IMG/VR virus record: IMGVR_UViG_3300026521_000003 | Span: 124,001 to 188,000 of that record | Direction: 5' to 3' (one strand) | DNA length: 64,000 nt | In this document: positions 6,147 to 63,547 of the stretch, one piece after another | How positions within the stretch are numbered: the first letter of the stretch is position 1 | Layout of the letters: every line of letters starts with the position of its first letter | Made by a program: the position numbers and the translations under genes | The notes under the pieces: generated by a model | What the model saw: only the letters and a program-made list of their open reading frames with translations | Databases searched by the model: none | What the model was told of the DNA's origin: nothing

Positions 6147-6240
6147 AATTTAATACCTTTTTATTTTATTTATTTTTTATTTTACAATTTTGTCTAAATA
6201 AAGAATAAATAAAGATAATTAATAAAAACGGAGATTTAAA

Positions 6241-6867
6241 ATGTCTAGACTAATTAATATTCTGAATAAGAATAAAATGATAAAATTAAAAGAAGCCGAT
6301 GAAGAAGCTCCGGCTGAAAATACTGATGAATTAACTTTGGATGATACTTCAGCTGATACTAAAGATCCTGGAGCAGGTGAGGCTCCAGTTGAAGGTACGG
6401 AAGAAGTTCAAGATGATACTACTGAAGATGAAGAAACATCAACTAATGATGAAAAAGACAATATGGATGACGTTCCAACAGAAGAAAAAGATGATATGAA
6501 TACACCCACAGAAGACATTGATAAAGCCATTGAAGAAATGATAGGTATGACGGAAATTCAACATACATCTAGTTCAACGATAATTGATTTTGAGGATGGG
6601 GGACAAGTAATGTTTGTTCATCCAATGGTATCATTAAAAAGTGAAACATTGAATGAAATAATTAAATTGATTATGAAAGACATAACAAAGACTTATGCCT
6701 CAAATAAAGATGAAATAACAGGAAAAGATCTAAATAAAACGAGATATTGGAAAAGTTTGAGTACTCTTATTGAAACTATGGTTAGAAGTCAATTAACAAA
6801 AAGTGATAATATGAATGGTTTGATTGATGAAATTAAACAAGTATTTAAAGTTTTAGAAGTAAAATAA
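6241..6867 (+). CDS. acidic late protein, putative head/prohead-associated
   Basis: AATAAATA upstream, leader ending LKE|A, D/E-rich low-complexity N half. Confidence 0.55.
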   Translation: MSRLINILNKNKMIKLKEADEEAPAENTDELTLDDTSADTKDPGAGEAPVEGTEEVQDDTTEDEETSTNDEKDNMDDVPTEEKDDMNTPTEDIDKAIEEMIGMTEIQHTSSSTIIDFEDGGQVMFVHPMVSLKSETLNEIIKLIMKDITKTYASNKDEITGKDLNKTRYWKSLSTLIETMVRSQLTKSDNMNGLIDEIKQVFKVLEVK

Positions 6868-6876
6868 TAGGATATA

Positions 6877-9117
6877 ATGATGGCTCAACCTTTGATGATT
6901 CAATCAATAGTGACTGATAATAGGATAACTGCAAAATTTTCTGATAACGAATTGCCTAAATATGCAAGGCATGGGGAGTTATATGTTGTTAATGGGATAT
7001 TATACATTTATGTTGATTTAGATAATACCGGTTCAGATATTGGACAATGGTTTCCTATGACATATGAAAAAGAAATTGTTATGTATGTTGAAGCTGAAGA
7101 AAAGAATATTTGGTCATTTCCTATATCATTTTATACTCATAATATACATGTTATTGTATATGATCAAAATGACCGAGTATATACTTCTAATTTTGATTAT
7201 GTTATTAAAAATGGTATAATGACTTTAACTTTTAATGAATTAATATCAGGGAAAGTCTATATTATTATGGATAAAGGATTTGATTGGATTGATTCATCAT
7301 TAATTGTTGCTGATAGAAAATTTGCTATAACATCCGATGAAAATAATTTTTATTATATTGAAGTAAACACCGAAAATTTATCTATTGATAAAAATGGTAA
7401 AATTATTATTAAAAACGATTTATCTGTAAATGGTAATTTAGATATTAATGGTGATTTAAATATTACTGGTGATTTAAAAATAATGGGTGAAAACATTGAA
7501 ATAGAATCTTCAACATTAACTGTTGCTGATAATATAATAACCTTAAATAATGGATTCGTGGGTTCTCCTTTTCAGAATACAGGGATAGAAGTAGATCGTG
7601 GTAGTTTGGGTAAATTAAATATTTTAACATTTAATGAAACGATGGATTATGTGGAGATCCCAGTTATAGATAATGAAGGACTTATTAATCAAGAAGAAGT
7701 AGCTACTAAACCGTTTGTAAATAACTCAATAATGATTGAAACAACTAGAGCACAATCTGCTGAAATTATATTACAAACAAATATTGATAACGAAATTACA
7801 AGGGCACAATCTACTGAAAGTACATTACAAACAAATATTGATGATGAAGTAAATAGAGCACAATCTGCTGAAAGTACATTACAAACAAATATTGATAATG
7901 AAATTACAAGAGCACAATCTGCTGAAAGTACATTACAAACAAATATTGATAATGAAATTACAAGAGCACAATCTGCTGAAACTGTATTACAAACAAAAAT
8001 AGATGATGAAGTTAATAGAGCTATTATAGTAGAAGGTGATATTAATAATTTACAAACTAACTCTAAATCAAATTTGGTTTCTGCTATAAATGAAAACGTT
8101 GAAAGTATTAACATTGAAAAAGGACGTATTGATTCAATCTTATCAGCTAGTGAAGCTGATAAAGATTCATTTGCAGAGATAGTAACGTTGATAAATTCGG
8201 TTGATATTGAAAATGATAATGTTTTCGCTAATTATGTTTTAGTTAATGATGAACGTAGTGCTAATATTGAACAAGCAATATTAGATGAAACTACTAGAGC
8301 ACAATCTACCGAAAGTACATTACAAACAAATATTGATAACGAAGTAAATAGAGCAACTGCAGTTGAGGATAACTTAAATATATTGGTTTCTGATTTATCA
8401 GCAAATCTAGAAACAAATTTTCTCAACAAGTCAACATCAGTCGAACAGATTATAAATCCTAATTTAAAATTAGATGGTTCAATACTGACATGGTCCTTAT
8501 CAACAGAATGGTTTTATTATTCTATAAATGAAAATTTGACTACTATTAACATTAATAGTAGTACAAATATAAACGAATATGTTTATACTATGGATGCTAT
8601 TGAGACTATTAAATTTAATAAAACAGGTCAGATATGGTCATCATTATATGGTAATTTAGAAGATTATTTTTTAGGTATTAATGATCAGTCTAAAGACAGT
8701 TTATTAATTAATGGTTTAAGCGATACACAATTTGTAAGAAGTGACATAGATTATACTATGAATGCAAATTATCATATATTAAAAGATTTAACCGTAGATG
8801 GTACACTTACAGCCGGAACAATAATTGAAACTTCATCTATTAAATATAAAGAAAATGTAAAATTGATAAAATCACCATTAGAAATTGTATCTAAATTAGA
8901 TGGAGTTCGATACGTATGGAAAGATACAAAAAAAGATGATATTGGTTTTATTGCTGAAGATGTTAATTTAGTACTTCCTGAGTTAGTTCAAATTAACGAT
9001 GGAGAAATTGAAGGAATGAATTATTCAAAAATAACTGCTGTTTTAGTTGAGGCTATAAAAGAACAACAAAAACAAATTACAGAATTAATGAATGAGGTAA
9101 AAAAATTAAAAGGATAA
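6877..9117 (+). CDS. tail fibre protein with C-terminal intramolecular chaperone (peptidase S74-type)
   Basis: 18-aa coiled-coil repeats; C-terminal ETSSIKYKENV...LDGVRYVWK...IGFIAEDV..VLPELV...MNYSKITAVLVEAIKEQ. Confidence 0.85.
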   Translation: MMAQPLMIQSIVTDNRITAKFSDNELPKYARHGELYVVNGILYIYVDLDNTGSDIGQWFPMTYEKEIVMYVEAEEKNIWSFPISFYTHNIHVIVYDQNDRVYTSNFDYVIKNGIMTLTFNELISGKVYIIMDKGFDWIDSSLIVADRKFAITSDENNFYYIEVNTENLSIDKNGKIIIKNDLSVNGNLDINGDLNITGDLKIMGENIEIESSTLTVADNIITLNNGFVGSPFQNTGIEVDRGSLGKLNILTFNETMDYVEIPVIDNEGLINQEEVATKPFVNNSIMIETTRAQSAEIILQTNIDNEITRAQSTESTLQTNIDDEVNRAQSAESTLQTNIDNEITRAQSAESTLQTNIDNEITRAQSAETVLQTKIDDEVNRAIIVEGDINNLQTNSKSNLVSAINENVESINIEKGRIDSILSASEADKDSFAEIVTLINSVDIENDNVFANYVLVNDERSANIEQAILDETTRAQSTESTLQTNIDNEVNRATAVEDNLNILVSDLSANLETNFLNKSTSVEQIINPNLKLDGSILTWSLSTEWFYYSINENLTTININSSTNINEYVYTMDAIETIKFNKTGQIWSSLYGNLEDYFLGINDQSKDSLLINGLSDTQFVRSDIDYTMNANYHILKDLTVDGTLTAGTIIETSSIKYKENVKLIKSPLEIVSKLDGVRYVWKDTKKDDIGFIAEDVNLVLPELVQINDGEIEGMNYSKITAVLVEAIKEQQKQITELMNEVKKLKG
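7735..8020 (+). repeat. 54-bp tandem repeat encoding E(I/V)(T/N)RAQS(A/T)ESTLQTNID(N/D)
   Basis: About 5 consecutive near-identical units, with a further copy near 8285-8360. Confidence 0.9.
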
Positions 9118-9120
9118 TAA

Positions 9121-13080: not shown

Positions 13081-13767
13081 ATGATAGTTCCAGAAATAGA
13101 TTACCCAATAATTAATAATATTAAAGATAAAAAAATTGTAATATATACGGCTAATAAAGTGGGTGAATTTCCACATAATTTTACCAAATCATTTATCCCT
13201 AGTAGTATTCCTATAAAATTAGATTGGTATGTTGGGTACACAAATATTATGTTGGATGATTTTAATATGATAGAAATACCATTAGATATTGCTAGGGGTT
13301 TACAATCGTTTAATATTATTAACCATTCAAAAAAAAGATATGATCAATATAATAGACCAAATCCGAATAATGAAAAAAAAGAAATAATTATGACTGAAGA
13401 TGAGATATATCTACAAGTAAAAGCTAAAAAATTTCTAATAGAGAAAGAAATTATCCGTATTTTTAATAAAAAAATTGATAGTTTATACAATCAATACGGA
13501 CGAGAATCTGATTCATGGGAGATACAATATTCAGAAGCTATTGAATACAAAAATGGAAATAATGACACCCCATTTATAGATATTTTATCTTCAAAACGAA
13601 ATATTAGTAAAGAATTATTAATTGAAAAAATTATTGCAAAAAATAAAGAATTTAAACAAAAATTTGCTAAAATTATTGCCGAAAAACATACGCTTGAAGA
13701 TAAATTGAAAAATATGAATACAGATACATTACTAAATTTATTTATTGATGAAAATATTGTAAAATAA
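13081..13767 (+). CDS. putative tail-fibre assembly/chaperone-like protein
   Basis: ESDSWEIQYSEAIEY...TPFIDILSSKRNISKELLIEKII resembles the E..SW..Q..EA...TP.L..LA..R motif of fibre-associated phage proteins. Confidence 0.55.
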   Translation: MIVPEIDYPIINNIKDKKIVIYTANKVGEFPHNFTKSFIPSSIPIKLDWYVGYTNIMLDDFNMIEIPLDIARGLQSFNIINHSKKRYDQYNRPNPNNEKKEIIMTEDEIYLQVKAKKFLIEKEIIRIFNKKIDSLYNQYGRESDSWEIQYSEAIEYKNGNNDTPFIDILSSKRNISKELLIEKIIAKNKEFKQKFAKIIAEKHTLEDKLKNMNTDTLLNLFIDENIVK

Positions 13768-13793: not shown

Positions 13794-14477
13794 ATGTCTA
13801 AATATCAAAATGAAATCAAAGAACTTATTGACATGCAGCCCACAACAATGTCCAAATATCAAATTGATAATTTTGTTATTAATGAAAAAATGACAGACTA
13901 TAAGATTCTAAAACAAATATTATTAGAATTAGGAACTCGATATAATGCTTATGAAGATATACTGATAGATTGTGAAATTTTAGAATTGGAAATAAAAAAA
14001 TCTGAAAAAGAATATATCGAAATTAAAGATGATATAACTAAAAAAATTAAAAAATTAGAAATTCAGAAACAAAAAAATAATTTAAGACGTATGAAAAAAA
14101 CTATAAAAAATCATGAATATGAAATTGCTATTTTTGAAGAAAATTATAAAAAAATTAAAGATAATTATGAATCACCAAAATTACTTTTGCAAGATGAAAC
14201 TGGAGAAGAAATATATTGGGTTAATAAGTTTATAAAAGAAGCTCAAATTGATATAATGACTAGTGGACGTATTGGTAAAGGTGTCTTAGACGCTATTCTT
14301 ATGCTTCCAGAAAAATTACAAGAAATAATAGTAAATAATGCAATTGCTCAAGCTGCCAATTCTAATTCATATATAGGTTTCAATGAAACAGAAATTATTG
14401 AAGGTATTAAATCTTCTAAAAAAGTTTCGTTGATGTTGAATACCTTAATAGGTGAGAAAAAAGATAAGGTGGATTAA
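13794..14477 (+). CDS. conserved phage coiled-coil protein
   Basis: 227-aa ORF, MSKYQIDNFV...KQILLEL...YWV.KF.KEAQIDIM..GRIG.G.LD; last gene of the fibre cassette. Confidence 0.55.
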   Translation: MSKYQNEIKELIDMQPTTMSKYQIDNFVINEKMTDYKILKQILLELGTRYNAYEDILIDCEILELEIKKSEKEYIEIKDDITKKIKKLEIQKQKNNLRRMKKTIKNHEYEIAIFEENYKKIKDNYESPKLLLQDETGEEIYWVNKFIKEAQIDIMTSGRIGKGVLDAILMLPEKLQEIIVNNAIAQAANSNSYIGFNETEIIEGIKSSKKVSLMLNTLIGEKKDKVD

Positions 14478-15223
14478 TGGGTTTTGATTTTAATAATTCA
14501 TCTGGAGAATCATTTGGTAATATAGAAGATGTTTTTTTTAAAAAAGACGGAAAATCTATTATAGATTCTACATCTTCTAATAATTCAGAAAAGATTAATT
14601 TGAATGAACTAAAACAATCTATTCATGAAAAAAGTATGCAACATCATAATAATGCTTCTGGGACAACAATAACGATTTCTAAGGAAATTTTAGATTTAGA
14701 TGAAGATAAAATTATTCAATTATCGCCATTAGAAGAACGTAGGATGAATATTTCGTCAGTACGTAATAAATCGTTTATTAATATAAATGATGGTTCGGAA
14801 ATTACTATTATTGAAAAAACACAAATGTATAATGGTGTAAATTTATATACTGCTAAACAAGAAAATGGTGAAATGATAACATATCCTCGTAGTATGTTTG
14901 TTGGTTCTACAAAGCAATTTGTACCAAAAGAATTTTATATTCGTGAAGCTGAAAGGGTTTTGGAGGATACAATAGTAAAACACTATAATAATATTAAAGT
15001 TTTATTAGAAAAACAAGAATTATTAGAAGAAACCCCTGATAGTAAATATTTAGAACTAATGTTGTCGGAACCATTATCAATAGGCTCTATGGTTGTACCC
15101 GATAAAGTTCAAATTCCCGTTAAAAGGATTTTTGATATGGAATACAAAATAATGTTTTTAGAGAATGTTATTTGTTTAGATAATAAAATAGCATCATTAT
15201 TGTTTATTGATATTTGGTTCTAA
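14477..15223 (+). CDS. hypothetical protein
   Basis: 248-aa ORF with TAATG translational coupling to the upstream gene. Confidence 0.6.
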   Translation: MGFDFNNSSGESFGNIEDVFFKKDGKSIIDSTSSNNSEKINLNELKQSIHEKSMQHHNNASGTTITISKEILDLDEDKIIQLSPLEERRMNISSVRNKSFININDGSEITIIEKTQMYNGVNLYTAKQENGEMITYPRSMFVGSTKQFVPKEFYIREAERVLEDTIVKHYNNIKVLLEKQELLEETPDSKYLELMLSEPLSIGSMVVPDKVQIPVKRIFDMEYKIMFLENVICLDNKIASLLFIDIWF

Positions 15224-15382
15224 ATTATTATTAATTAAATAGTTTGTTAGATCACGTATGAATACAGAATTATTTGATGTGATAGGTATATCTCTAGGTA
15301 AAGTTTCTTTATCTAAAAAATCTAAAACATCAGATATTTCAAAATGATCGGTTTTTTTAATAGAGAATAATTTTCTATTCAT
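15197..15382 (-). CDS. small hypothetical protein (probable start MNRKLFS)
   Basis: Short ORF downstream of 15426..15671; start uncertain. Confidence 0.3.
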   Translation of the reverse strand: MNRKLFSIKKTDHFEISDVLDFLDKETLPRDIPITSNNSVFIRDLTNYLINNNLEPNINKQ

Positions 15383-15425
15383 TTCAATTTTTCTTAATTC
15401 TAATTGATCTAACATAAATAAAATC

Positions 15426-15671
15426 CTACATACTTTTAAAATTGAATGAAAATGATAAATCATCACTTTCTATATTTTTTTCATCTTTTAATTCTGATTC
15501 AATTAATTTTTTAATTTTTTCAGCTCTCATCTTTTTAACAATAGTTTCATTTATTTTTGCTAATGTTTCTTCACTATAATTCGCAGTAGGTATATTTGGA
15601 TTTTCATCAAAACTCATACTTATTACTTCATCATTTACACTATCAAATGGTATTTTTTTTAGTTCTGCCAT
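15426..15671 (-). CDS. small late hypothetical protein
   Basis: AGGAG RBS and a perfect late promoter upstream. Confidence 0.65.
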   Translation of the reverse strand: MAELKKIPFDSVNDEVISMSFDENPNIPTANYSEETLAKINETIVKKMRAEKIKKLIESELKDEKNIESDDLSFSFNFKSM

Positions 15672-15691
15672 TTTTTAACTCCTTCTATTTT

Positions 15692-15704
15692 AATAGTATT
15701 TATA
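15692..15704 (-). promoter_or_regulatory. late promoter TATAAATACTATT
   Basis: Minus strand reads TATAAATACTATT, the extended T4 late-promoter consensus. Confidence 0.85.
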
Positions 15705-15713
15705 TCAAAAAAA

Positions 15714-15721
15714 TGTAAAAT
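15714..15721 (+). promoter_or_regulatory. TGTAAAAT promoter-like motif (pre-replicative class)
   Basis: TGTA(A/T)AAT precedes ten non-structural transcription units (see findings). Confidence 0.6.
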
Positions 15722-15752
15722 AACTAAAAATATAATATAAGGATAAAAAATA

Positions 15753-17558: not shown

Positions 17559-17580
17559 TTTAAATTCGATAAATAAATTT

Positions 17581-17958
17581 ATGATTGATATAAAAAAAAT
17601 TAAAAAAGATGATGTTGTTTGGTGTGTTTCACAATCATTAGATCAAATGATATATCCTATAAAAGCTAAATTTTTAGATATAGAATCTCCTATATCTAAT
17701 AAATTAATTCTTGTAAAATATAATAATAAAACATTATGCTACCCATCACATTTATTATTTGAAACTAAATTAGACGCTAAAGTTTATGGCTCAATAAATT
17801 TTATGAAATTATATTATAGTTTTGATCCATTTTTCATTTCAGAAAATATTGATGAAGAAATTTTAAAAGAGGCATCATTTTTAGTAAATAAGTTTGAAAA
17901 AAATAATCCTTCAAAATTTTTATATTATTGGATGGGAAATGTACCAAATAGATTCTAA
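17581..17958 (+). CDS. hypothetical protein, paralogue of next gene
   Basis: Shares W..., V.Y.N, (T/S)K(L/I)DA and NNP..(F/L)L.Y pattern with the 17939 ORF. Confidence 0.6.
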   Translation: MIDIKKIKKDDVVWCVSQSLDQMIYPIKAKFLDIESPISNKLILVKYNNKTLCYPSHLLFETKLDAKVYGSINFMKLYYSFDPFFISENIDEEILKEASFLVNKFEKNNPSKFLYYWMGNVPNRF

Positions 17959-18471: not shown

Positions 18472-18543
18472 AGGACCCCCTTATAAATTTATATTATTTA
18501 TATAAAAAATGTAAAATATACTAAAATCTTATAAAGGTGAAAT

Positions 18544-19050
18544 ATGGATGAGTTAGCTCCAGGTCTAATATATCTTAATGATTTAAATAAATTGGTGTAT
18601 TCAAATTCCTATATTATAAATTCTGGAAGTAAATTGAGTTCAATTTCTAATGATTTGGGGGTGTATGCTGAGTATATTTCAGATGATGATAGAGATTTAT
18701 TATATGCTAAGTCTATTGGGGTTAAAGTTTTTAATGAGGTAGTAAATGAGTTTGATTATTCACTTATATCTGATATTGATACAGATATAGAAATCGAGAA
18801 GTTGAAAAAACAATTTTCTGAGTTAAGTGAATTAATTGAAGAAGAATATACTTATATTAAGTTATCAGAACATAATATACTTTTATTAAAAATGGCTTTT
18901 ATACTTAAAAAACATTTGGATTCATTAAATACATCGGTTTATTTAATGCGTGGATCTGGAGTAGCATCATTTATATTTTATTTAATAGGTTTAAATAAAG
19001 TTAATCCTATTAAATTTGGATTAGATTATAAAAATTTTTGGAATAATTAA
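18544..19050 (+). CDS. DNA polymerase III alpha (DnaE)-like fragment
   Basis: MRGSGVASFIFYLIGLNKVNPIKFGL matches the DnaE GRGS.AGS.V.Y.LGIT.VDP..Y.L motif; only 168 aa. Confidence 0.7.
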   Translation: MDELAPGLIYLNDLNKLVYSNSYIINSGSKLSSISNDLGVYAEYISDDDRDLLYAKSIGVKVFNEVVNEFDYSLISDIDTDIEIEKLKKQFSELSELIEEEYTYIKLSEHNILLLKMAFILKKHLDSLNTSVYLMRGSGVASFIFYLIGLNKVNPIKFGLDYKNFWNN

Positions 19051-19667
19051 TGGAGAATAAAATGGAAGAACAAACATCAACAGAACAAGTTAAGAAAAAA
19101 GGTCGACCTAAATCGGAACACTATGTTAAAGAAAGTGAATTAAGAGATGAAATTGCAATAGCTCAACAAAATGCTATAAAGGCTATTGATGAAATTACTA
19201 AAGAGTGGGATAAAAAAATTGAAAATGCATCTACGGAACCTGAAAAAGAGGCATTACGAATTGAAAAAGAAAAAGCTTTAGATAGAGCGAAGACTAAAAC
19301 GTACTGTACTCCAAGGTTAGGAGAAATTGTTGTTCTTACGGTAGATAGAGTTGGTACACAAACAAAGTTTAGACATTATACTTATTTAGATGATATGAAA
19401 GCTGAAGCTATTTATCAATCAATTAGAGGTATTATAAAATTTAATTTGGATAAAACGAATGATGCAGGACAAAAAAGTTCATCATTTTCTTACCTTACAC
19501 AAATTATTACAAATGCATTTAGACAGATATTAAAAAAAGAGAAAAAAAATCGAGAGATTAAAGATCAAGCAATTGAAATGGCGTTAGATCAACATAGTGA
19601 TATTGATGTTGATTTTGAATCTATAAAAAGAAAGAAAGATCGTTTAGATATAGCACATAGAGATTAA
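19050..19667 (+). CDS. gp55: late-transcription sigma factor (T4 gp55-like)
   Basis: HYVKESEL...LGEIV...KFRHYTYLDDMKAEAI...KFN...SFSYLTQIITNAFRQILKKEKK; many TATAAATA promoters in the window. Confidence 0.9.
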   Translation: MENKMEEQTSTEQVKKKGRPKSEHYVKESELRDEIAIAQQNAIKAIDEITKEWDKKIENASTEPEKEALRIEKEKALDRAKTKTYCTPRLGEIVVLTVDRVGTQTKFRHYTYLDDMKAEAIYQSIRGIIKFNLDKTNDAGQKSSSFSYLTQIITNAFRQILKKEKKNREIKDQAIEMALDQHSDIDVDFESIKRKKDRLDIAHRD

Positions 19668-19738
19668 TTTTTAATTTAATTTTAATTTTAATTTTTGTAT
19701 AATATATAGAAATAAATAAAAAAAGAAGGGTTTACCAC

Positions 19739-20470: not shown

Positions 20471-20479
20471 AAAAACAAT

Positions 20480-20511: not shown

Positions 20512-20520
20512 TATTAAATT

Positions 20521-21746: not shown

Positions 21747-21796
21747 AAAATTTTTTAATATAAATAACAATAATAATTAAAATAGAAGGAAAAAAA

Positions 21797-22360: not shown

Positions 22361-22366
22361 AATATT

Positions 22367-22906: not shown

Positions 22907-23017
22907 GTATTATACCCTGATATTTTTAAAATTATTATACATTTTTTTAAAAAAATTGTTACTATAATCTTTAAAATAAAAGTATAAATAAAGATAAATT
23001 AACTTAATGGAGCCAAT

Positions 23018-35407: not shown

Positions 35408-35456
35408 ATCCACGATATACACTTATCAGACTTTTTGTAAAATAGTTAATATTAAT

Positions 35457-35478
35457 TTAAGTATTAATTTAATATAAT
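35457..35478 (+). promoter_or_regulatory. TTAAG-N11-TATAAT host-sigma70-type promoter
   Basis: Same spacing recurs at 54497, 55915 and 58910. Confidence 0.6.
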
Positions 35479-35505
35479 AACTAAGAAAAGAAACAAGGAG
35501 TTTTA

Positions 35506-39432: not shown

Positions 39433-39536
39433 AAAATACTTAATACCCCAAAAAAATTAATATATTGATATAAATATAAAGTGAGGAGAGATTATCTCCA
39501 ACAAACTTTATAATTAAAAACACACGGGGGTTTTAC

Positions 39537-52695: not shown

Positions 52696-52789
52696 AACAT
52701 CTCCAATTTATATAGTATATTTATAGATTTAAAAATAATTTTTCTAAAAAATGTAAAATAGTATATAATAAATGATATAAGGAAAATGA

Positions 52790-54421
52790 ATGGCAGATAA
52801 AAATTATTCAGCTAGTGATATTAAAGTATTAAGTGATCGCGAACATGTTCGTTTAAGAACAGCAATTTACTTAGGTAGTACTGAGGAGACATCATATGAA
52901 GTGCCAATTTTTGAAAAAGATGATATAAAAATTAAGCAGAAATTTTTCATACCTGCAATTTATAAAGCATTTAATGAAATTTCAGATAATGCAATAGATG
53001 AATTGACTCAGCTTGCTAAAAAAGATAAAAAAATATCTTTTGCTCATGATACTATAAAAAATAGATTTAAAGTCTGTGATAATGGTCGAGGTGTACCTAT
53101 TGATATGCACCCTCAAACTGGTAAATATACACCTGAAACCGTTTTTACAGAATTAAGATCTGGTAGAAACTTTGATGATGATGCTAAGGATTCTGGGGTA
53201 ATTGGTACAAATGGGGTAGGTTCATCATGTGTTGCTATGTTATCTGAAGAGTTTTTAGTCCAAATTAAAAGAGATGGTAAGTTTTATGAACAAATGTATA
53301 GAGATGGTACAGCATCAATAGATGAACCAGCAATTAATAATTATAAAGGTAGAGATTCTGGAACGTGTATTGAATTTAAAATTGATACTGCATTACCTCA
53401 ATTTACTACAACGAAAATGGATCCGGAACTAATTCAAAATAGAGTTGTTGAGATTGCACTTAATAATCCACAATTAGATTTATCATATGTTAGAAAACAG
53501 TTAGATGAAGATGGAGAAGAAGAACAAATTCAAGCACATTATGCTTTTAAAGGTGGTATGTTAGAATATGTCAAGCGTGTTTCTGAAAGATTTTTTGAAT
53601 TTAAGTATGACCATGACGAATTTACAGCCAGATACTATGTAATTCTTGACAAATATCAAGGAATAGATGAAAAAATATTCGTATATGTTAATTCATCATT
53701 ACTTTATGAAGGTGGTACAGCTGCACATATGTTTTTTAATACGTTCTTTTCTAGTGTGAATGATGGTTTAAAAAGAGAAATTAAAAAACGTAAAATTGAT
53801 TTAAATAAAAATGATGTTAAACAAAACCTTTTAGTTGTTGCTGATGTTAAGATGAAAAATCCAAGATATGATAATCAATCAAAAACTAGATTAATTTCAC
53901 AAGAGATTAAAAAACATATTGATAAAATGATTGGTGATCAAATTTCAAAATTTTTATCAATTAATAAACAATGGATAGAAGAAATTCTTGATAGAGCCGA
54001 ATTTAGACAACGTATTGCTGATATGGCTGAAGTTAAGAAAAAACAAAAGAAGAAAAAAGGTAAATTGGCAAAACTAATCGATTGTTATACAAAGGATAGA
54101 AGCCAAGCAACAATCGCATTCTCAGAAGGAGATTGTATTGACTCTAACACTAAAATTCATTATGAAGGTGGCATTAAACCAATCAAAGATATTTTAGTTG
54201 GTGAAAAAGTTTTAACTCATGATGGTACTTATCAATTTGTTATTGCTAATAATTCAGTTGAGAAAGAAGAATATATTATTGAATTTGGAGATGAAAAAAT
54301 ATCATTTTCTAAAAACCATAAGCATCCTATTTTCAATACTGAAACTGGAGAGGTAGAGGTAATCGAAACTTATCTTATTAATCCAGAAGTACATAAATTA
54401 CTTAGAAAGAAAGGGTTATAA
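52790..54421 (+). CDS. gp39: type II topoisomerase ATPase subunit (gp39/GyrB-like), N-extein fused to N-terminal half-intein
   Basis: EHVRLR..IYLGS, EISDNAIDE, DNGRGVP, SGRNFDD, GTNGVGSS, SGTCIEF, NQSKTRL, KLIDC, FSEGD, then intein sequence. Confidence 0.92.
   Translation: MADKNYSASDIKVLSDREHVRLRTAIYLGSTEETSYEVPIFEKDDIKIKQKFFIPAIYKAFNEISDNAIDELTQLAKKDKKISFAHDTIKNRFKVCDNGRGVPIDMHPQTGKYTPETVFTELRSGRNFDDDAKDSGVIGTNGVGSSCVAMLSEEFLVQIKRDGKFYEQMYRDGTASIDEPAINNYKGRDSGTCIEFKIDTALPQFTTTKMDPELIQNRVVEIALNNPQLDLSYVRKQLDEDGEEEQIQAHYAFKGGMLEYVKRVSERFFEFKYDHDEFTARYYVILDKYQGIDEKIFVYVNSSLLYEGGTAAHMFFNTFFSSVNDGLKREIKKRKIDLNKNDVKQNLLVVADVKMKNPRYDNQSKTRLISQEIKKHIDKMIGDQISKFLSINKQWIEEILDRAEFRQRIADMAEVKKKQKKKKGKLAKLIDCYTKDRSQATIAFSEGDCIDSNTKIHYEGGIKPIKDILVGEKVLTHDGTYQFVIANNSVEKEEYIIEFGDEKISFSKNHKHPIFNTETGEVEVIETYLINPEVHKLLRKKGL
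54134..54418 (+). mobile_element. N-terminal half of a split intein (95 aa)
   Basis: Block A CIDSNTKI directly after EGD; IKDILVGEKVLTHDG; block B FSKNHKHP; no block F/G (HN) before the stop. Confidence 0.85.
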
Positions 54422-54432: not shown

Positions 54433-54537
54433 CAACCATCTTAAACTCTCATATTATCTTTTCTAATAAACAATCTGAATTCTTTTTAATATATATTTAA
54501 GTTAAATTATAATATAATAATGATAAAGGGTTTTATT

Positions 54538-55912: not shown

Positions 55913-55962
55913 ATTTAAGTTGACTTAGTATAAAATATAGAAAAAAATAAAAGGTATATAAA

Positions 55963-56901
55963 ATGCAATTAAGTAATACTATTAAACAACGATTTGTAAA
56001 AGATTGGAAATTACCCTTTCATGTAGTTCAGGAACCTATGTTCAGCTATATGATTAATGAGGTGGATACTCATTTTAAATCAAAAGATAAACTTAAACTG
56101 TTAGAAGATGTTGTCGACGCATTAGGTAGTGAAGAAGCATTTTTTTCTGAGTCAAATAGAGTAAAAAATGATATAATTCAAAATATACAATCTACTCCAG
56201 TTTATAAACAATTACAAGATGATAAACTTACTAAATATGATATAGAACCGAATGGTATTAAGCAGAAAGATATTTATACGATGGAGAATGTTAATAGAAC
56301 ATTTATTTCATTGGATTTAGTTAAAGCTAACTTTAATGTTATGAAAATGTATGATAGTTCTTTAACGTTAGGGTATCAAACTTATGATGAATTAGTATCT
56401 AGTGTAACTGATTTTGACTATTTTAAAAAGTCTAAGTATTTACGCCAAGTAATATTTGGTAATATGTTGCCTAAAAAACAACAAAAATTACAAAAATGGG
56501 TTATGAGACAACTTGTCGAAATGCTAAATAAAGATATAGGTATTGATATGAATGATTTTGTATCAGCTAGTGCCGATGAAGTATTATTTGCTATTGATCC
56601 AAAAGATGCCGATAAATTTGTTGGTATGATTGAAAGAAAATTAAAAAGTAATGATAATACATCGGATTTTGCAGCATGGGTTCGAGTTGAGGCTTTCACA
56701 TTAAAATCAATAGGTAATAAGAAATTTTTTGTTAAAGAGTTTTTAGATAGTACTATTGAATTTAAGGGTATCCCAAGTTTTTTATTTATGCAAGTGTATA
56801 AACGATTTGTAAATAAAGAAGTTATAAAAATGGATAAAATGTTTTTTCACGAAGGTTATTTAGCTAGCTTTGAACAGGGAGTTTTTGATGAATCTAGTTA
56901 A
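55963..56901 (+). CDS. conserved hypothetical protein, possible polymerase/nucleotidyltransferase palm-like fold
   Basis: ISLDLVKANF...SKYLRQVIFG...SADEVLF...EFKG; promoter at 55915-36. Confidence 0.45.
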   Translation: MQLSNTIKQRFVKDWKLPFHVVQEPMFSYMINEVDTHFKSKDKLKLLEDVVDALGSEEAFFSESNRVKNDIIQNIQSTPVYKQLQDDKLTKYDIEPNGIKQKDIYTMENVNRTFISLDLVKANFNVMKMYDSSLTLGYQTYDELVSSVTDFDYFKKSKYLRQVIFGNMLPKKQQKLQKWVMRQLVEMLNKDIGIDMNDFVSASADEVLFAIDPKDADKFVGMIERKLKSNDNTSDFAAWVRVEAFTLKSIGNKKFFVKEFLDSTIEFKGIPSFLFMQVYKRFVNKEVIKMDKMFFHEGYLASFEQGVFDESS

Positions 56902-57917: not shown

Positions 57918-58847
57918 TTACTCCCATTTACCACTATTGATTTTAGCTTCTAAATTCTTAAATTGGTTTTTCTTAGCATCATTAACTATTAAGTCCAAAT
58001 AAGTTTCTGGTATTTCTTTATATATAGAATATGCTAACCATTGCATTTGATAGTATGCAGCACCACTTAATCTTAAATCAAAGAAATTCTTTAAACTTCT
58101 TAAATTAATACTAAACATTAAATCTACACTAAATGTATCCGCTATTACAGTACCTTTTACAACGTCACCAACATTTCTCTTAGCTTTAGAAGAAAGTAAT
58201 TTAAAACATTCATCTTCATTACCTTCAAAATTATTAAATTGATCTATTAATGATTTAGCAATGGTAAGTGAAATAAATTTTTCTTCGCCTAATATAATAT
58301 ATTGGTGTTGTAATTTATTGAAAATAGTTCCAAATTCAATTGCATTATAATCTATATCGTCTGTTACTAAAAGACCTTTAAATCGGTTCATTCTATTTAT
58401 AAAGCCACTCGCACCAAGATTGTATTTCATAACTACTAGAAACGTATTAACTAAATCGCTAAGAGTGTATCTAGTTGATTGAACTGAAAATGATGCTATT
58501 CTATGTCTAGCTAATTCTTGCAAAACACCTCTTGAAGTGTTTTTAATATTGAAATTTAGTACTACATGTTCTAATGTACTCTCATGAAAATAAGTATGTG
58601 AAAGGTCGTATAATAATTTACTTCCTTTCTCATTAACGTTTTTTTCTAAAGTTGAAAGAGTATCATTATTTTTAATATAATGGTTTTCTAATTCATCTTC
58701 TAAAGTTAGAATCTCCTGATGTTCTGATTTATCAAAACTATTATAACAAGTTCTCGCTCCAAATTCACTTACAAAGAGTGGTGTAGCGTGTAAGAGAGTA
58801 GCTCTAGGTAAACTATAATTTATACCGTATGCTGTGATTTGACTCAT
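57918..58847 (-). CDS. thyX: flavin-dependent thymidylate synthase ThyX
   Basis: ARTCY.S, HESTLEH, SRGVLQELARHRIASFSVQSTRY, INLRSLKNFFDLR. Confidence 0.95.
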   Translation of the reverse strand: MSQITAYGINYSLPRATLLHATPLFVSEFGARTCYNSFDKSEHQEILTLEDELENHYIKNNDTLSTLEKNVNEKGSKLLYDLSHTYFHESTLEHVVLNFNIKNTSRGVLQELARHRIASFSVQSTRYTLSDLVNTFLVVMKYNLGASGFINRMNRFKGLLVTDDIDYNAIEFGTIFNKLQHQYIILGEEKFISLTIAKSLIDQFNNFEGNEDECFKLLSSKAKRNVGDVVKGTVIADTFSVDLMFSINLRSLKNFFDLRLSGAAYYQMQWLAYSIYKEIPETYLDLIVNDAKKNQFKNLEAKINSGKWE

Positions 58848-58957
58848 ATATTATTCCTTTATTTTTTTATATATAATTATACAAAAATAAAAGTGAGATT
58901 AAAGGTTAATTAAGTTTTGATTTAATATAATAATAAAAAAGTTTAGGAATTTAATAT

Positions 58958-59776
58958 ATGAGTAATTTATTTCAAACCCTAGAACAGTTATCATCTGATC
59001 TTATGGAAAAATCAAAAAATGCTAGAACAAAAGCTGCAAAATTAGCCTATGAAGATTCTGCTATGTTATTATTAAATGAGATTAATAGGTTGAATAAGGA
59101 AATTGAAGAAGACCAAAAAGCTAAAATAGAAGCTCAAATGAAAAAATTTGATATTCATCATCAAGATTATACAACACTTTTATCGAGAGGCCATATTGGC
59201 ATCCCCAGTAATATTCATGCTGAAATTTCATCATTTACGGTGGGACAAAAGAAAGCAGGAGAAGTTTTTCAAAATTTAAGTGAAGATTATAAACATGATG
59301 TACTAAATCATTTAGCCGCAGATAAAGAAATGATTGAACAATTAGTAGCATACCGTCATAATTATCATTATATTACTCACACAAAAGGTCATGATGGTAT
59401 TGATGAAGATAATAATGTATATGAAGTTAAAAATAGAAAATATGTTTATAAAAAAGATAAACGTGCAAATTGTGATCTTATTTTTGATAGAATTTCAAAA
59501 GCTACTGAAAGAAAATTTCGAGAAGGGCGCCCAACAATTATAATGAATATGACTGATGGTGCAAAATTATTATTAGAAATGAAAATACGTTTTTCAGACG
59601 AATTATTAGATCTTTATAGTGAAAAAGTTGAAGCATTAAAATCATCAAAAACATCTGGATTTGCAATTCCATTTAGTGAATATAAAGATTATATTGAAGA
59701 AATAACTTATGTGTGTAATGATATTGACCAATACCATATACAAAAACAGGTATTGGATTATATAACTTTATCTTAA
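58958..59776 (+). CDS. putative PD-(D/E)xK restriction-like endonuclease
   Basis: E...KGHDGIDEDNNVYEVKNR; early-type promoter at 58910-31. Confidence 0.55.
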   Translation: MSNLFQTLEQLSSDLMEKSKNARTKAAKLAYEDSAMLLLNEINRLNKEIEEDQKAKIEAQMKKFDIHHQDYTTLLSRGHIGIPSNIHAEISSFTVGQKKAGEVFQNLSEDYKHDVLNHLAADKEMIEQLVAYRHNYHYITHTKGHDGIDEDNNVYEVKNRKYVYKKDKRANCDLIFDRISKATERKFREGRPTIIMNMTDGAKLLLEMKIRFSDELLDLYSEKVEALKSSKTSGFAIPFSEYKDYIEEITYVCNDIDQYHIQKQVLDYITLS

Positions 59777-61482: not shown

Positions 61483-61558
61483 AGAAGATTCCTTTTTCTT
61501 TTTATTTATTCAAAAAAATGTAAAATTAGTATATAATTAGAATAAAGAGAGTTTTAAA

Positions 61559-61858
61559 ATGAGAACAGATATTACACATTCATTTGAGGATTTTGAACGC
61601 ATAGCAGAAGATTATTTTGAATTAATCCCTCCTGATACCGATTCATTTGATTTAGAATTATGTACGTTTTGGGAGTATGAGGAATGGGATAAATTATTGA
61701 TTTTTCATTTTGATAATGAAATGGATTTAAATTTTTTCTATGATAAATTAATTGAATGTCCAAAGTATGAAGAATCTTTTGATATAGAAGATCATTTTGA
61801 AGGTGTAAATAGAAAAGTATTAACAATCACAATTGAATCAAAAAGTACAGGATTATAA
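61559..61858 (+). CDS. acidic hypothetical protein
   Basis: 99-aa ORF downstream of TGTAAAAT (61519-26). Confidence 0.55.
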   Translation: MRTDITHSFEDFERIAEDYFELIPPDTDSFDLELCTFWEYEEWDKLLIFHFDNEMDLNFFYDKLIECPKYEESFDIEDHFEGVNRKVLTITIESKSTGL

Positions 61859-62662
61859 ATGAAATTAAATAAATTATATGAAAAAATTTCGGGGTTAATA
61901 GCGTTAGAATTATATGATAGCAAAACTAGTAAAGAAGCAGTCGAGCAAGAATTTTCTAAAGAGTTTTTATTTTTAAATAATATGAATAAAGATCTATTTA
62001 AAGATTTATCTGATGATGAACAGTTTCAAGTTTTACGAATATATGATGTTCACTTTAGAATTGGTGCACCGATGATCACAGATGCAGAATATGATTTATA
62101 TGATTCTATATATAAACAAGAAACAAATGATACTACTCCAATTATGTTTGAACCTAGTGTACAAGCTTGGGAGAAGGAAAAACATACTATTGTTATGGGT
62201 TCATTGAGTAAATGCAATACTTTAGAAGAAGTAGAGAAATGGAATAATAAGCCTAATATTATTGCTAGTCATAAAGTTATATCTGAAAAACTAGATGGGA
62301 TTTCTTTAGAATTGATATACGAGAAAGGTGTATTTAAAAAAGCTATTACTAGAGGAGATGGTAAAGTCGGTGAGAATATAACTGAAAATGCTATTTATTT
62401 TGATGGTGTTGTAAAAGAATTAGGAGAAAAGCTAGATTGTGCTGTAAGAGGCGAGGTTATGATTTTAAAGGATAACCTTAATAGTATTAATACTATTCTT
62501 TTAAGAGAAGGAAAGGATGCATTAAAGAATACTAGAAATGGTGTTGCCGGTCAAGCAACTAAATTTAAAGATAGAAATGAGGAAATATTATCTCTTATAA
62601 CCTTTATTGCATATGAAATTCAAATTTTTAATATTTCTCATACAGGTGAAAATGTTCTTTAA
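61859..62662 (+). CDS. ligA: NAD+-dependent DNA ligase, N-terminal (Ia + partial adenylation) part only
   Basis: ITDAEYD, H...MGSLSK, SEKLDGISLELIY, AITRGDG.VGENIT, VRGEV, NTRNGVAG, FIAYE; stops before motif IV, OB fold and BRCT. Confidence 0.85.
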   Translation: MKLNKLYEKISGLIALELYDSKTSKEAVEQEFSKEFLFLNNMNKDLFKDLSDDEQFQVLRIYDVHFRIGAPMITDAEYDLYDSIYKQETNDTTPIMFEPSVQAWEKEKHTIVMGSLSKCNTLEEVEKWNNKPNIIASHKVISEKLDGISLELIYEKGVFKKAITRGDGKVGENITENAIYFDGVVKELGEKLDCAVRGEVMILKDNLNSINTILLREGKDALKNTRNGVAGQATKFKDRNEEILSLITFIAYEIQIFNISHTGENVL

Positions 62663-63102
62663 GTTCTTTTAAATATACTTTCTTTCGGGTCATAACCTAC
62701 GGTGGAATCATTAATCCATTGTTGGTCTGTAGCTAATCTTAATTCTAAAATTTCTGTGGTTTCAAATTCTAGATATAATAATTCCATTACAATTATAACT
62801 TCTTGTTCTAGATTACCATGTGGATATGCTTCAATTCTAAGAACTTGTACTCTAGGTTCATATTTTTCAATAACTGTCTGAATTTCAGTTTTAGCTATAT
62901 TACGAATTCTATTAATATTTTGTTCATGAATTAATCTATGAAGATTGGTACCATATTCTGGATCATAAACTCTTGAACCTTTTTCTGTTTTTAAAATATT
63001 TAAAATGGATCGTTTTATTAATTCTCTATCATGATCTACAAATCCATCAATACTAGATCCCTCAATAGGGAATAGTCTAAACATGCCTGTATATGTGCTC
63101 AT
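62659..63102 (-). CDS. gp25: baseplate wedge protein (T4 gp25-like)
   Basis: IKRSILNILKTEKGSRVYDPEYGTNL...IEKYEPRV. Confidence 0.92.
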   Translation of the reverse strand: MSTYTGMFRLFPIEGSSIDGFVDHDRELIKRSILNILKTEKGSRVYDPEYGTNLHRLIHEQNINRIRNIAKTEIQTVIEKYEPRVQVLRIEAYPHGNLEQEVIIVMELLYLEFETTEILELRLATDQQWINDSTVGYDPKESIFKRT

Positions 63103-63103
63103 T

Positions 63104-63487
63104 TTAATATCCTAATGCTTTTCTTACTGAATTCATAGAAGGTATTTTTAATTTTCTACCAAAGTAGAATCCTGTAAACGGATCTGTTATTCCATTTCGT
63201 TCGGCAATAATCCACCAAAATTTTGAATTACCATAGAATTTATATGATATTGCATCAGGTCTATTAGTGTATTTTGCATGGTCAATAGTCCATACATCAT
63301 CATCTAATTCTGCAATACTTAAATCGACTCTATGTTCCCATGTTTTACTTTTTGTTCCTGGTAACATATATGAAAATCTATTAACATCTCTTTTTGATGT
63401 ATCTTGAACTTTGAACCATTCTTGTTCTTGTTGAGGTACACTAGATCTGCTATCGTCGTATGGTCTTATAGGCATATCAAACTCCAT
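63104..63487 (-). CDS. gp53: baseplate wedge protein (T4 gp53-like, LysM fold)
   Basis: RPDAISYKFYGNSKFWWIIAERNGITDPF...KLKIP; adjacent to gp25. Confidence 0.85.
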   Translation of the reverse strand: MEFDMPIRPYDDSRSSVPQQEQEWFKVQDTSKRDVNRFSYMLPGTKSKTWEHRVDLSIAELDDDVWTIDHAKYTNRPDAISYKFYGNSKFWWIIAERNGITDPFTGFYFGRKLKIPSMNSVRKALGY

Positions 63488-63547
63488 TTAGTTATTTACT
63501 TATTTATTCAGTAAAATGTAAAATATTTGTATAAAGGGGAAAATCAT

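What the first reader, a model, noticed from the sequence alone, without database searches (positions are those of the whole stretch)
6179..63524. A distinct TGTA(A/T)AAT promoter class marks replication and nucleotide-metabolism units
Seen: TGTAAAAT or TGTATAAT, preceded by an A or T tract, lies about 20-65 nt upstream of tmk (6179-86,-), uvrD (15714), the dnaE fragment/gp55 (18510), the clamp (19696), the NTPase (22934-41,-), clpS (35436), topoisomerase (52752), thyX (58876-83,-), the ligase unit (61519) and 63548 (63517). I did not see it upstream of structural genes. TG abuts the hexamer, unlike the standard TGn extended -10, and no common -35 is evident. Inference: a middle-mode promoter read by a phage sigma factor or activator.
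Basis: partly seen in the sequence, partly recalled or inferred. Interest (0 to 1): 0.6.

Follow-up and report, generated by a model that had tools for sequence, protein, structure and literature searches.

The report
Early promoter class of vent jumbo phage
An uncultured 290-kb T4-related phage from hydrothermal vents marks its replication and nucleotide-metabolism genes with a strict 8-base promoter, TGTA(A/T)AAT; this is most likely its ordinary early promoter read by the host polymerase, not a new phage-sigma "middle" class.

Summary
TGTAWAAT is not more frequent than chance overall, but its placement is far from chance. Genome-wide, 47 of 121 copies lie in the 4.6% intergenic DNA, oriented, with a median of 29 nt to a start codon. 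Single-mismatch variants show no such bias. The motif is kept at orthologous genes in a relative with about 62% protein identity, while the flanks diverge.

Downstream genes are almost all replication, recombination or nucleotide-metabolism genes, never structural ones. Structural genes carry a T4-type late motif, WATAAATAA.

The gene for the only sigma-like protein (gp55-type) itself lies behind a TGTAAAAT. I found no second sigma, MotA, AsiA or phage RNA polymerase.

So this is the pre-late promoter class. It most likely works as a -35-independent promoter read by host RNA polymerase with its primary sigma. The "middle class read by a phage sigma" reading is not supported, but it is not excluded. 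TG really does abut the hexamer (34 versus 4 for TGn). phiEco32's own sigma reads a similar tAATGTAtA element. A rarer third class, TTTAAGT-N10-TAWAAT, also exists.

The parts
6179..6186 (-). TGTAAAAT promoter before tmk (5442-6146). A late-type AATAAATA lies 4 nt downstream on the same strand, and a divergent late motif lies at 6205(+).
   Evidence: kept, with its late motif, at the ortholog in relative G402
13758..13765 (+). TGTAAAAT promoter before ORF 13794-14477 (phrog_1409, unknown function).
   Evidence: conserved as TGTATAAT in L002/G402
15714..15721 (+). TGTAAAAT promoter before uvrD (15753-17558). It lies back to back with a late motif on the minus strand, 9 nt upstream.
   Evidence: conserved in G402 with diverged flanks
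18510..18517 (+). TGTAAAAT promoter of the operon holding the Pol III alpha fragment (18544-19050) and the gp55-like late sigma (19050-19667).
   Evidence: no other promoter motif between 18522 and 19058; conserved in G402
19050..19667 (+). gp55-like late sigma factor gene, the only sigma-like gene found in the genome.
   Evidence: phrog_234 at 1e-18; single locus in own-genome searches; no paralog by phmmer
19696..19703 (+). TGTATAAT promoter before ORF 19739-20470 (putative clamp, unverified). A late motif follows in tandem at 19712-19719.
   Evidence: aligned and conserved in L002 behind a terminator-like hairpin
22934..22941 (-). TGTATAAT promoter before the AAA-type NTPase gene (22367-22906).
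   Evidence: conserved in G402
35436..35443 (+). TGTAAAAT promoter 62 nt before clpS (35506-35814), which is followed by clpA-like 35829-38132.
35457..35479 (+). Second clpS promoter, of the third class: TTTAAGT-N10-TATAAT.
52752..52759 (+). TGTAAAAT promoter before the GyrB-like topoisomerase subunit (52790-54421). A divergent late motif lies at 52724(-).
58876..58883 (-). TGTATAAT promoter before thyX (57918-58847).
61519..61526 (+). TGTAAAAT promoter of the unit 61559-61858 plus the NAD-ligase adenylation domain gene (61859-62662). A divergent late motif lies 8 nt upstream.
63517..63524 (+). TGTAAAAT promoter before ORF 63548-63979 (unknown function). A divergent late motif lies 8 nt upstream.
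54497..54519 (+). Third-class promoter, TTTAAGT-N10-TATAAT.
55915..55937 (+). Third-class promoter, TTTAAGT-N10-TAAAAT, before ORF 55963-56901.
58910..58931 (+). Third-class promoter, TTAAGT-N10-TATAAT, before ORF 58958-59776. It is divergent from the thyX promoter.
39470..39476 (+). Example of the late class (TATAAATA type), before the tail-fibre-like gene 39537-43817.

Best explanation
TGTA(A/T)AAT, preceded by a short A/T tract, is the pre-late (early / delayed-early) promoter of an uncultured T4-related jumbo phage of about 290 kb from hydrothermal vents.

How it works (inferred):
- It is a -35-independent promoter. TAWAAT is the -10 hexamer.
- The TG sits at -14/-13, one base closer than in the usual TGn extended -10.
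- Transcription should start at an A about 7-9 nt downstream.
- It is read by host RNA polymerase with the host's primary sigma factor, without a phage sigma.

What it drives (shown): replication, recombination, topoisomerase and nucleotide-metabolism genes, and the operon that holds the gp55-type late sigma.

The rest of the programme:
- gp55 then reads (by analogy with T4) the second class, WATAAATAA, in front of head, portal, sheath, baseplate and fibre genes.
- Genes needed throughout (tmk, putative clamp, RNR, replication initiator) carry both motifs in tandem. This gives 'middle-like' expression, as described for RB49 and T4-like cyanophages.

Shown here: the motif, its placement, its gene association, its conservation, and the absence of a second detectable sigma. 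Inferred: which factor reads it, and the start site.

The confidence of 0.6 is for the whole statement, including 'host sigma alone'. That it is the pre-late promoter class I hold at about 0.9.
For: Placement and strictness:
- Placement and orientation are far from chance.
- The 8-mer is strict: no single-base variant is enriched in intergenic DNA.
- A is enriched 7-9 nt after the motif, as expected for a start site.

Gene association:
- 24 annotated first genes behind the motif are DNA or nucleotide metabolism and none is structural.
- 8 annotated first genes behind WATAAATA are structural.
- Fisher p = 1e-7.

Conservation in relative G402:
- Across 55 ortholog pairs with mean 62% identity, 9 of 10 motif-bearing genes keep the motif and 19 keep the late motif.
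- The motif is 94% identical between the two phages and the flanks 43-54%. A and T swap freely at position 5.

Factor:
- The gp55 gene lies behind TGTAAAAT with no other promoter motif in between.
- One sigma-like gene only; no Sigma70_r2/r4, MotA, AsiA, T7-type or multisubunit RNA polymerase; no transcription factor among 110 proteins at 217-289 kb.
- Distant gp55-bearing viral contigs have -35 + TGn + TATAAT early-type promoters and keep nATAAATA. So the early motif differs between lineages while the late one is constant.

Abutting TG in bacteria:
- The C. jejuni cj0183 promoter has TGTATAAT with TG at -14/-13, and C. jejuni promoters have a T-rich -16 region and a poorly conserved -35 (PMC3824568).
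- TTTTGTAWAATW exceeds its reversed control in most of 121 Campylobacteria genomes, for example 48 v 7, 55 v 8, 32 v 3, 28 v 2.

Host hints: the habitat is vent, epibiont and biofilm metagenomes, and the nearest ThyX cluster is mostly Campylobacterota.

Literature parallel: T4 relatives lacking motA/asiA use host sigma70 early promoters and tandem early plus late promoters (PMC2984593).
Against: - The host is unknown, so its promoter consensus could not be checked.
- In the four Campylobacteria genomes sampled in detail, the canonical TGn form outnumbers the abutting form in upstream regions (17:5, 22:8, 18:9, 42:25). The phage is the reverse, 4:34. Part of the abutting count in G008 comes from a repeat element.
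- Near-invariance of all eight positions over about 50 sites resembles promoters of dedicated phage factors (T4 late; phiEco32 gp36 tAATGTAtA, PMC8948821) more than typical host promoters.
- Five canonical TGATATAAT sites exist in the phage. One is at the head of a 30-kb block of small genes. With the TTTAAGT-N10-TAWAAT class, these could be the true time-zero promoters.
- No transcription start sites are available. The RNA run gave only contigs inside genes.
- The contig is estimated at 87% complete, so a factor gene could lie in the missing part.
Confidence: 0.6

Rival explanations
1. True middle class. The motif is read by host core polymerase carrying an unrecognised phage specificity factor. 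That factor could be a small region-4-less sigma, a sigma appropriator, or a covalent modification of RNA polymerase. It would be made from a few earlier promoters (canonical TGATATAAT, or TTTAAGT-N10-TAWAAT) or injected with the DNA.
For: - TG is shifted by one base relative to the canonical extended -10, and the canonical form is avoided: 34 versus 4.
- All eight positions are strict.
- The motif closely resembles the single-element promoter tAATGTAtA of phiEco32's own sigma gp36, which has start sites 6-8 nt downstream (PMC8948821).
- Other candidate early promoters exist: TGATATAAT with a leaderless start at genome 236753, heading a block of about 30 kb of small genes whose first product is a basic Cys4 protein, and the TTTAAGT-N10 class.
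- In T4, replication genes are typically served by middle promoters (established knowledge).
- The contig is only 87% complete.
Against: - No second sigma, MotA, AsiA or polymerase by profile searches of all six frames.
- No gp55 paralog.
- No transcription-factor family among 110 proteins of the small-gene region.
- The candidate earlier promoters are few (about 5 and about 11) and serve no recognisable regulator.
- An Apyc1-like hydrolase gene (47 bits, below Pfam's 50-bit cut-off) carries TGTATAAT. If it is an anti-defence gene, it would be expected to be immediate-early.
- Abutting TG promoters occur in bacteria (PMC3824568).
Confidence: 0.27
2. The motif is not a promoter. It is a conserved intergenic site for something else, such as a DNA-binding regulator or replication protein, or an RNA-level signal in 5' leaders.
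For: - No start sites have been mapped.
- Some copies lie in IS605/TnpB ends and in an iteron-rich, origin-like region.
Against: - The motif contains a consensus -10 hexamer.
- It is strictly oriented with the downstream gene, at promoter-like distances (median 29 nt to the start codon).
- It is followed by A-rich positions where a start is expected.
- It stands at the heads of operons and at divergent junctions.
- An RNA signal would not be expected to stay fixed relative to a late -10-like motif on the opposite strand.
Confidence: 0.04
3. Chance occurrence of an A/T-rich 8-mer in an A/T-rich genome.
For: The window count equals the shuffle expectation: 28 versus 25.5.
Against: - Intergenic enrichment is about tenfold over composition-matched simulations.
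- The motif is the top-ranked among 280 permutations of its letters for promoter-like context.
- It is conserved at orthologous positions while the flanks diverge.
Confidence: 0.01

Closest known systems
Early (host sigma70) plus late (gp55) promoter programme of T4 relatives that lack motA/asiA (RB49, T4-like cyanophages such as S-PM2 and Syn9)
   Same: - gp55 homolog present.
- NATAAATA-type late motif before structural genes.
- No motA/asiA.
- Replication and nucleotide genes behind a sigma70-like early motif.
- Some genes carry early and late promoters in tandem (PMC2984593).
   Different: - Here the early motif has no -35 at all.
- TG sits directly on the hexamer, and the motif is almost invariant.
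- Many early promoters sit back to back with a late promoter at fixed spacing (7-9 or 17 nt).
- The phage is a 290-kb jumbo only about 32-34% identical in major capsid protein to cultured phages.
Extended -10 (TGnTATAAT) promoters of bacterial primary sigma factors, especially the -35-poor, T-rich -16 type of Campylobacter and Helicobacter
   Same: - -10 hexamer TAWAAT.
- TG upstream, preceded by a T-rich or A-rich tract.
- No need for a -35.
- Short leaders with an AAGGA-type ribosome site.
- The cj0183 promoter even has TGTATAAT (PMC3824568).
   Different: - TG is at -14/-13, not -15/-14.
- The canonical spacing is nearly absent from the phage's upstream regions (4 versus 34).
- The canonical spacing predominates in the four bacterial genomes sampled in detail.
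phiEco32 middle/late promoters read by the phage sigma gp36 (single element tAATGTAtA)
   Same: - A single conserved element near -10 with a TGTA core and A/T before it.
- No -35.
- Start expected 6-8 nt downstream.
- The reading sigma lacks region 4 (PMC8948821).
   Different: - No gp36-like or other sigma70-family gene was found here.
- In phiEco32 the class serves middle and late genes, including structural ones.
- Here the class never precedes structural genes, and it precedes the only sigma gene.
T4 middle promoters (MotA box at -30 plus a sigma70 -10, with AsiA)
   Same: The gene set served (replication, recombination, nucleotide metabolism) is the one T4 largely serves from middle promoters.
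   Different: - No conserved box near -30 in the TGTAWAAT class.
- No MotA or AsiA.
- The rarer TTTAAGT-N10-TAWAAT class has the MotA-box-like geometry instead.

Membership tests
Extended -10 promoter of a primary sigma factor | -10 hexamer of type TAnnnT (A at position 2, T at position 6) | tested here: met
   TAWAAT is invariant in all promoter-like sites.
Extended -10 promoter of a primary sigma factor | TG at -15/-14, one base upstream of the hexamer (TGn) | tested here: not met
   TG abuts the hexamer. In oriented upstream regions there are 34 nTG-TAWAAT and 4 TGn-TAWAAT. The relative G402 has 10 versus 2.
Extended -10 promoter of a primary sigma factor | Works without a -35 element | tested here: inconclusive
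   No -35-like conservation in the alignment of 47 sites, and a generic -35/-10 scan is at shuffle level. Function was not assayed.
Extended -10 promoter of a primary sigma factor | Transcription starts about 7 nt downstream and is made by host holoenzyme alone | not testable with these tools
   Only assembled RNA contigs inside genes were available. A-enrichment 7-9 nt downstream is suggestive.
T4-type late promoter (gp55-dependent) | TATAAATA-like element at -10 | tested here: not met
   TGTAWAAT differs at 4 of 8 positions. A separate WATAAATAA class exists, with 106 gene-proximal sites.
T4-type late promoter (gp55-dependent) | Precedes virion structural genes | tested here: not met
   0 of about 27 annotated genes behind TGTAWAAT are structural. 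MCP, portal, sheath, baseplate and fibres carry WATAAATA.
T4 middle promoter (MotA/AsiA) | Conserved activator box centred near -30, 11-13 bp from the -10 | tested here: not met
   No information content upstream of -6.
T4 middle promoter (MotA/AsiA) | Phage encodes MotA and AsiA | tested here: not met
   PF09114 and PF09010 give no match at E <= 1 in the six frames of the contig, which is 87% complete.
phiEco32-type single-element promoter of a phage sigma | Single element tAATGTAtA near -10 | tested here: inconclusive
   The TGTAWA core is shared and the preceding bases are A/T only (A 29/47 at -2; T 28/47 at -1). The phage motif extends 3' to AAT (PMC8948821).
phiEco32-type single-element promoter of a phage sigma | Phage encodes a sigma70-family protein that reads it | tested here: not met
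   No Sigma70_r2/r4 match. The only sigma-like gene is of gp55 type and lies behind this promoter.
RB49 / cyanophage-type two-class programme | gp55 present, motA/asiA absent, and some genes with tandem early plus late promoters | tested here: met
   6 of 49 sites have a late motif 2-37 nt downstream on the same strand: tmk, putative clamp, replication initiator and others.

The most novel reading that the evidence does not exclude
TGTAWAAT is read not by the host sigma but by an unrecognised phage-encoded specificity factor: a very small sigma-like or sigma-remodelling protein with no detectable homology. That factor would be made from a handful of canonical or TTTAAGT-type immediate-early promoters. 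A T4-related jumbo phage without MotA/AsiA would then run a three-tier cascade built on two -10-only promoter types (TGTAAAAT, then ATAAATA). The back-to-back early/late modules at fixed spacing would act as mutually exclusive switches.
Probability: 0.25. Interest if true: 0.65.

Novelty: new variant of a known kind. Interest (0 to 1): 0.4.

Why it matters
- It gives a clean, testable transcription map for an uncultured vent jumbo phage: about 50 early, about 100 late and about 11 third-class promoters. Unknown genes can be assigned to temporal classes from sequence alone.
- The one-base shift of the TG and the strictness of the element pose a concrete question. Either some hosts, perhaps vent Campylobacterota, prefer TG at -14/-13, or the phage retargets RNA polymerase with an unknown factor.
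- The fixed-spacing divergent early/late modules suggest promoter competition as part of the early-to-late switch.
- The motif could also serve as a host-prediction or classification marker for this phage lineage.

None of this changes the general picture of T4-like gene regulation.

Tried and rejected
Host identification:
- Megablast of 8 kb against cultured phages found no match.
- tblastn with gp15 and MCP found only 26-34% relatives.
- A ClpA-based scan of genome contigs gave mixed phyla.
- The IS605/TnpB protein reached at most 36% identity in 401 Campylobacteria genomes, so no recent host copy was found.
- No tRNAs were found outside the window.
- The ClpA atlas look-up was uninformative.

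RNA evidence:
- One metatranscriptome run holds 27% of the sampled words of the 8-kb query (window 15000-23000), but only as contigs inside genes.
- There are no starts, ends or strand information, and DNA carry-over is possible.
- I gave read laying 5,901 letters.

Second sigma or activator:
- Six-frame family searches were negative for Sigma70_r2, Sigma70_r4, three sigma PHROGs, MotA, AsiA, T7-type and multisubunit RNA polymerase.
- phmmer with gp55 against all ORFs was negative.
- Pfam on 110 proteins at 217-289 kb was negative for any transcription factor.

Other items:
- A split of TGTAAAAT and TGTATAAT into two subclasses is rejected. Orthologous promoters swap A and T at that position in 4 of 9 pairs.
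- I could not check in depth the bacterial lineages where abutting TG dominates.
- MAFFT misaligned two of three A/T-rich intergenic regions, so I used anchored comparison instead.
- Literature word searches for the motif found no described phage promoter class with this sequence.
- I did not use the big protein searches, structure prediction or complex prediction. I named no alternative genetic code.

Full report
**What the DNA is.** The window is bases 124,001-188,000 of a single 289,880-bp IMG/VR virus record. The record is linear, and CheckV estimates it at 87% complete. GC content is 27%.
- It carries T4-type genes: a gp15-like tail sheath stabiliser; a gp23-like major head protein, a portal, and a baseplate wedge subunit; a tail sheath; and a gp55-like late sigma at window 19050-19667 (phrog_234, 1e-18).
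- No close cultured relative exists. Megablast found nothing. The best major-capsid matches are 32-34% identical, to jumbo myoviruses of 350-470 kb.
- Runs that hold the sequence come from hydrothermal vent, epibiont and biofilm metagenomes.

**Check of the observation.** All ten sites are present as described.
- The window holds 28 copies of TGTAWAAT against 25.5 expected, so frequency alone shows nothing.
- Placement does. Genome-wide, 47 of 121 copies lie in the 4.6% of DNA outside naive ORFs. Markov simulations of the intergenic DNA give 4-7.
- 46 of 121 copies are followed, in the right orientation, by a ribosome site and an ORF. All letter-permutations of the motif pooled do so 7.6% of the time. 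The only permutations that come close overlap the motif itself.
- The distance from motif end to start codon has a median of 29 nt.
- Every single-base variant of the 8-mer falls back to background intergenic fractions.
- In the alignment of 47 sites, the five bases before the motif are almost purely A/T. Nothing further upstream is conserved. A is enriched 7-9 nt after the motif.
- A generic -35/-10 scan is at shuffle level.
Among TAWAAT hexamers in oriented upstream regions, 34 are preceded directly by TG and only 4 by TGn.
- One more site in the window, 13758(+), has all these properties.

**Conservation.** A related contig, G402 (88 kb, 28% GC), shares 55 orthologous proteins at a mean 62% identity.
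- 9 of the 10 genes that carry the motif in this genome carry it there too, and 19 late-motif genes keep the late motif.
- When orthologous promoters are anchored on the motif, the 8-mer is 94% identical and the flanks 43-54% identical.
- The only change inside the motif is A/T at position 5, which swaps in 4 of 9 pairs. TGTAAAAT and TGTATAAT are therefore one class.
- In the relative, the promoter before the putative clamp gene sits directly after a terminator-like hairpin.

**What the motif precedes.** PHROG and Pfam scans of the first genes downstream give:
- thymidylate kinase, UvrD, and Pol III alpha fragments, one of them in an operon with gp55;
- family-B polymerase fragments, clamp loader, and the putative clamp;
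- two NAD-ligase pieces, topoisomerase II subunits, and a type IA topoisomerase;
- SbcC and SbcD, an exonuclease, a replication initiator, and a primase/helicase fragment;
- RNR large subunit, ThyX, MazG, GTP cyclohydrolase, and an NTPase;
- ClpS, a homing endonuclease, and a TnpB-type transposase.

No structural gene is among them.

**A second motif.** WATAAATAA(A) has 106 gene-proximal copies, mostly 15-35 nt before the start codon. It precedes the major head protein, portal, sheath, baseplate wedge and fibre-like genes. This is the T4/cyanophage late motif (PMC2984593). The split between the two classes gives Fisher p = 1e-7.

**Who reads it.**
- The only sigma-like gene is the gp55 type, and it has no paralog.
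- Profiles for Sigma70 regions 2 and 4, MotA, AsiA, T7-type polymerase and multisubunit polymerase find nothing.
- Pfam on 110 proteins of the small-gene region finds ankyrins, Tpt1, RNase HII, TnpB and an Apyc1-like hydrolase, but no regulator.
- The gp55 gene is co-transcribed with the Pol III alpha fragment from the TGTAAAAT at 18510, with no other promoter motif in between. The class must therefore work before gp55 exists.
- A phage without its own polymerase needs promoters that the unmodified host enzyme reads, and this class is by far the commonest non-late one.
- In distant gp55-bearing viral contigs (33-37% GC), the equivalent intergenic signals are classical GTTTACA/TTGACA-N17-TGnTATAAT promoters, while nATAAATA is kept. 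The early signal thus differs between these lineages while the late one is constant. That fits an early signal matched to the host sigma and a late one matched to the phage's own gp55.
- Published descriptions of T4 relatives without motA/asiA give the same two-class scheme, with tandem early and late promoters at 'middle' genes (PMC2984593). Here 6 of 49 sites have such a tandem late motif, including tmk and the putative clamp.

**Is an abutting TG compatible with a host sigma?**
- Published work on C. jejuni describes a TATAAT -10, a TTTTTTTG -16 region and a weak -35. It notes that the cj0183 promoter has TGTATAAT with TG at -14/-13 (PMC3824568).
- In 121 sampled Campylobacteria genomes, TTTTGTAWAATW exceeds its reversed control in most. 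Examples are 48 v 7, 55 v 8, 32 v 3 and 28 v 2.
- In some of these genomes it exceeds the canonical TTTTGNTAWAATW. G106 has 32 v 16 and G110 has 28 v 15.
- Against this, in the four genomes I could analyse by upstream region, TGn outnumbers the abutting form. Part of the abutting signal in one of them comes from a repeat.
- The host itself is unknown. Habitat, ribosome-site style, and the nearest ThyX cluster (mostly Campylobacterota) are only hints.

**Why the phage-factor reading survives.**
- The exclusive use of the shifted register, and the invariance of eight positions over about 50 sites, are more typical of dedicated phage factors.
- phiEco32's sigma gp36, which lacks region 4, reads the single element tAATGTAtA with starts 6-8 nt downstream (PMC8948821).
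- The genome also has other candidate earliest promoters:
  - Five intergenic TGATATAAT sites. One is placed so that transcription would start at the ATG of the first gene of a roughly 30-kb block of small paralogous genes.
  - A third class, TTTAAGT-N10-TAWAAT, found at exactly 10-nt spacing (11 sites against a mean of 1.6 at other spacings, p = 8e-7). It stands before clpS-clpA, a CCA/poly(A)-polymerase-like enzyme, phosphoesterases and unknown genes. Its geometry recalls a MotA box. Its sequence recalls the C. jejuni -35 element TTTAAGTnTT, but it lies about 12 bp closer to the -10.

I therefore put about 0.6 on host sigma alone and about 0.27 on a phage-dependent class.

**Architecture noted.** 17 of 49 early sites have a late motif on the opposite strand within 60 nt upstream. 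The preferred gaps between the two 8-mers are 7-9 nt (7 cases) and 17 nt (4 cases). Two -10-type elements this close cannot both be occupied, so competition between them may help the early-to-late switch. This is inference.

**Verdict.** It is the pre-late promoter class of a T4-related jumbo phage. It is a new sequence variant of a known kind, not a new kind of system.

Noticed in passing
window 35457-35479, 54497-54519, 55915-55937, 58910-58931; genome 6918, 32617(-), 44213, 191487(-), 217861, 228071: A third promoter-like class, (A)TTTAAGT-N10-TAWAAT, occurs only at exactly 10-nt spacing. It stands before clpS-clpA, a CCA/poly(A)-polymerase-like gene, DHH and metallophosphoesterases, an Apyc1-like hydrolase and unknown genes. 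TTTAAGT matches the published C. jejuni -35 word but lies about 12 bp closer to the -10. None was found in the 88-kb relative.
   Followed up: partly
window 6179/6205, 15703/15714, 18501/18510, 52724/52752, 61509/61519, 63507/63517 and 11 more in the genome: Early (TGTAWAAT) and late (WATAAATA) motifs stand back to back on opposite strands, with preferred gaps of 7-9 nt or 17 nt. A recurring module is TTATTTATTC-N6-TGTAAAAT.
   Followed up: partly
L014:6753-7085 (genome 236753-237085), outside the window: A canonical TGATATAAT lies 6 nt before the ATG of a 105-aa basic Cys4 protein with no ribosome site, so the mRNA is probably leaderless. It heads a tightly packed block of about 30 kb of plus-strand genes. 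Many of these are paralogs ending in ...IF(I/V)F.
   Followed up: partly
genome 119406-120157 (just left of the window; L010:14406-15157): A 752-bp intergenic region lies between the replication-initiator gene and sbcD. It has repeated CTGTGATTAGATTGTGTAATTT-like units and a TGATATAAT, and looks like a replication origin with iterons.
   Followed up: no
L016:5500-7140 (genome 265.5-267.1 kb) and genome about 30.6-30.8 kb: IS200/IS605-type elements with a TnpB (OrfB_IS605, Cas12f-like TNB domain) and conserved hairpin ends (CCCAATGG...CCATTGGG). The ends contain TGTAAAAT or TGATATAAT. The best bacterial TnpB match in 401 Campylobacteria genomes is only 36% identical.
   Followed up: partly
window 18544-19050 and 61859-62662; genome 4449-5252, 10239-11600, 25479-26633, 123161-123811, 225495-226100, 275838-277973: Replication genes are in pieces: family-B polymerase fragments, Pol III alpha fragments, NAD ligase in two separate genes far apart, and a primase/helicase fragment. 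There is also a large homing-endonuclease gene. Each piece has its own early promoter.
   Followed up: no
window 35506-38132: A phage-borne clpS-clpA operon with two tandem promoters of different classes.
   Followed up: no
genome 217-289 kb (L012-L017): Five ankyrin-repeat proteins, Tpt1/KptA RNA 2'-phosphotransferase, RNase HII, a CYTH protein, a cytidylyltransferase-like protein, and an MBL-fold hydrolase scoring 47 bits on the anti-Pycsar Apyc1 model (cut-off 50).
   Followed up: partly
L003:19109-19999 (genome 19109-19999): A GTP cyclohydrolase gene sits behind an early promoter. Such genes accompany 7-deazaguanine DNA modification in some phages. If G is modified here, the single G of the promoter motif could be affected. 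This is pure speculation and untested.
   Followed up: no
L198-L205 (distant gp55-bearing viral contigs): These carry T4-style early promoters (GTTTACA or TTGACA, 17 nt, TGnTATAAT) together with nATAAATA late motifs. This shows how the early signal differs between T4-like lineages.
   Followed up: partly
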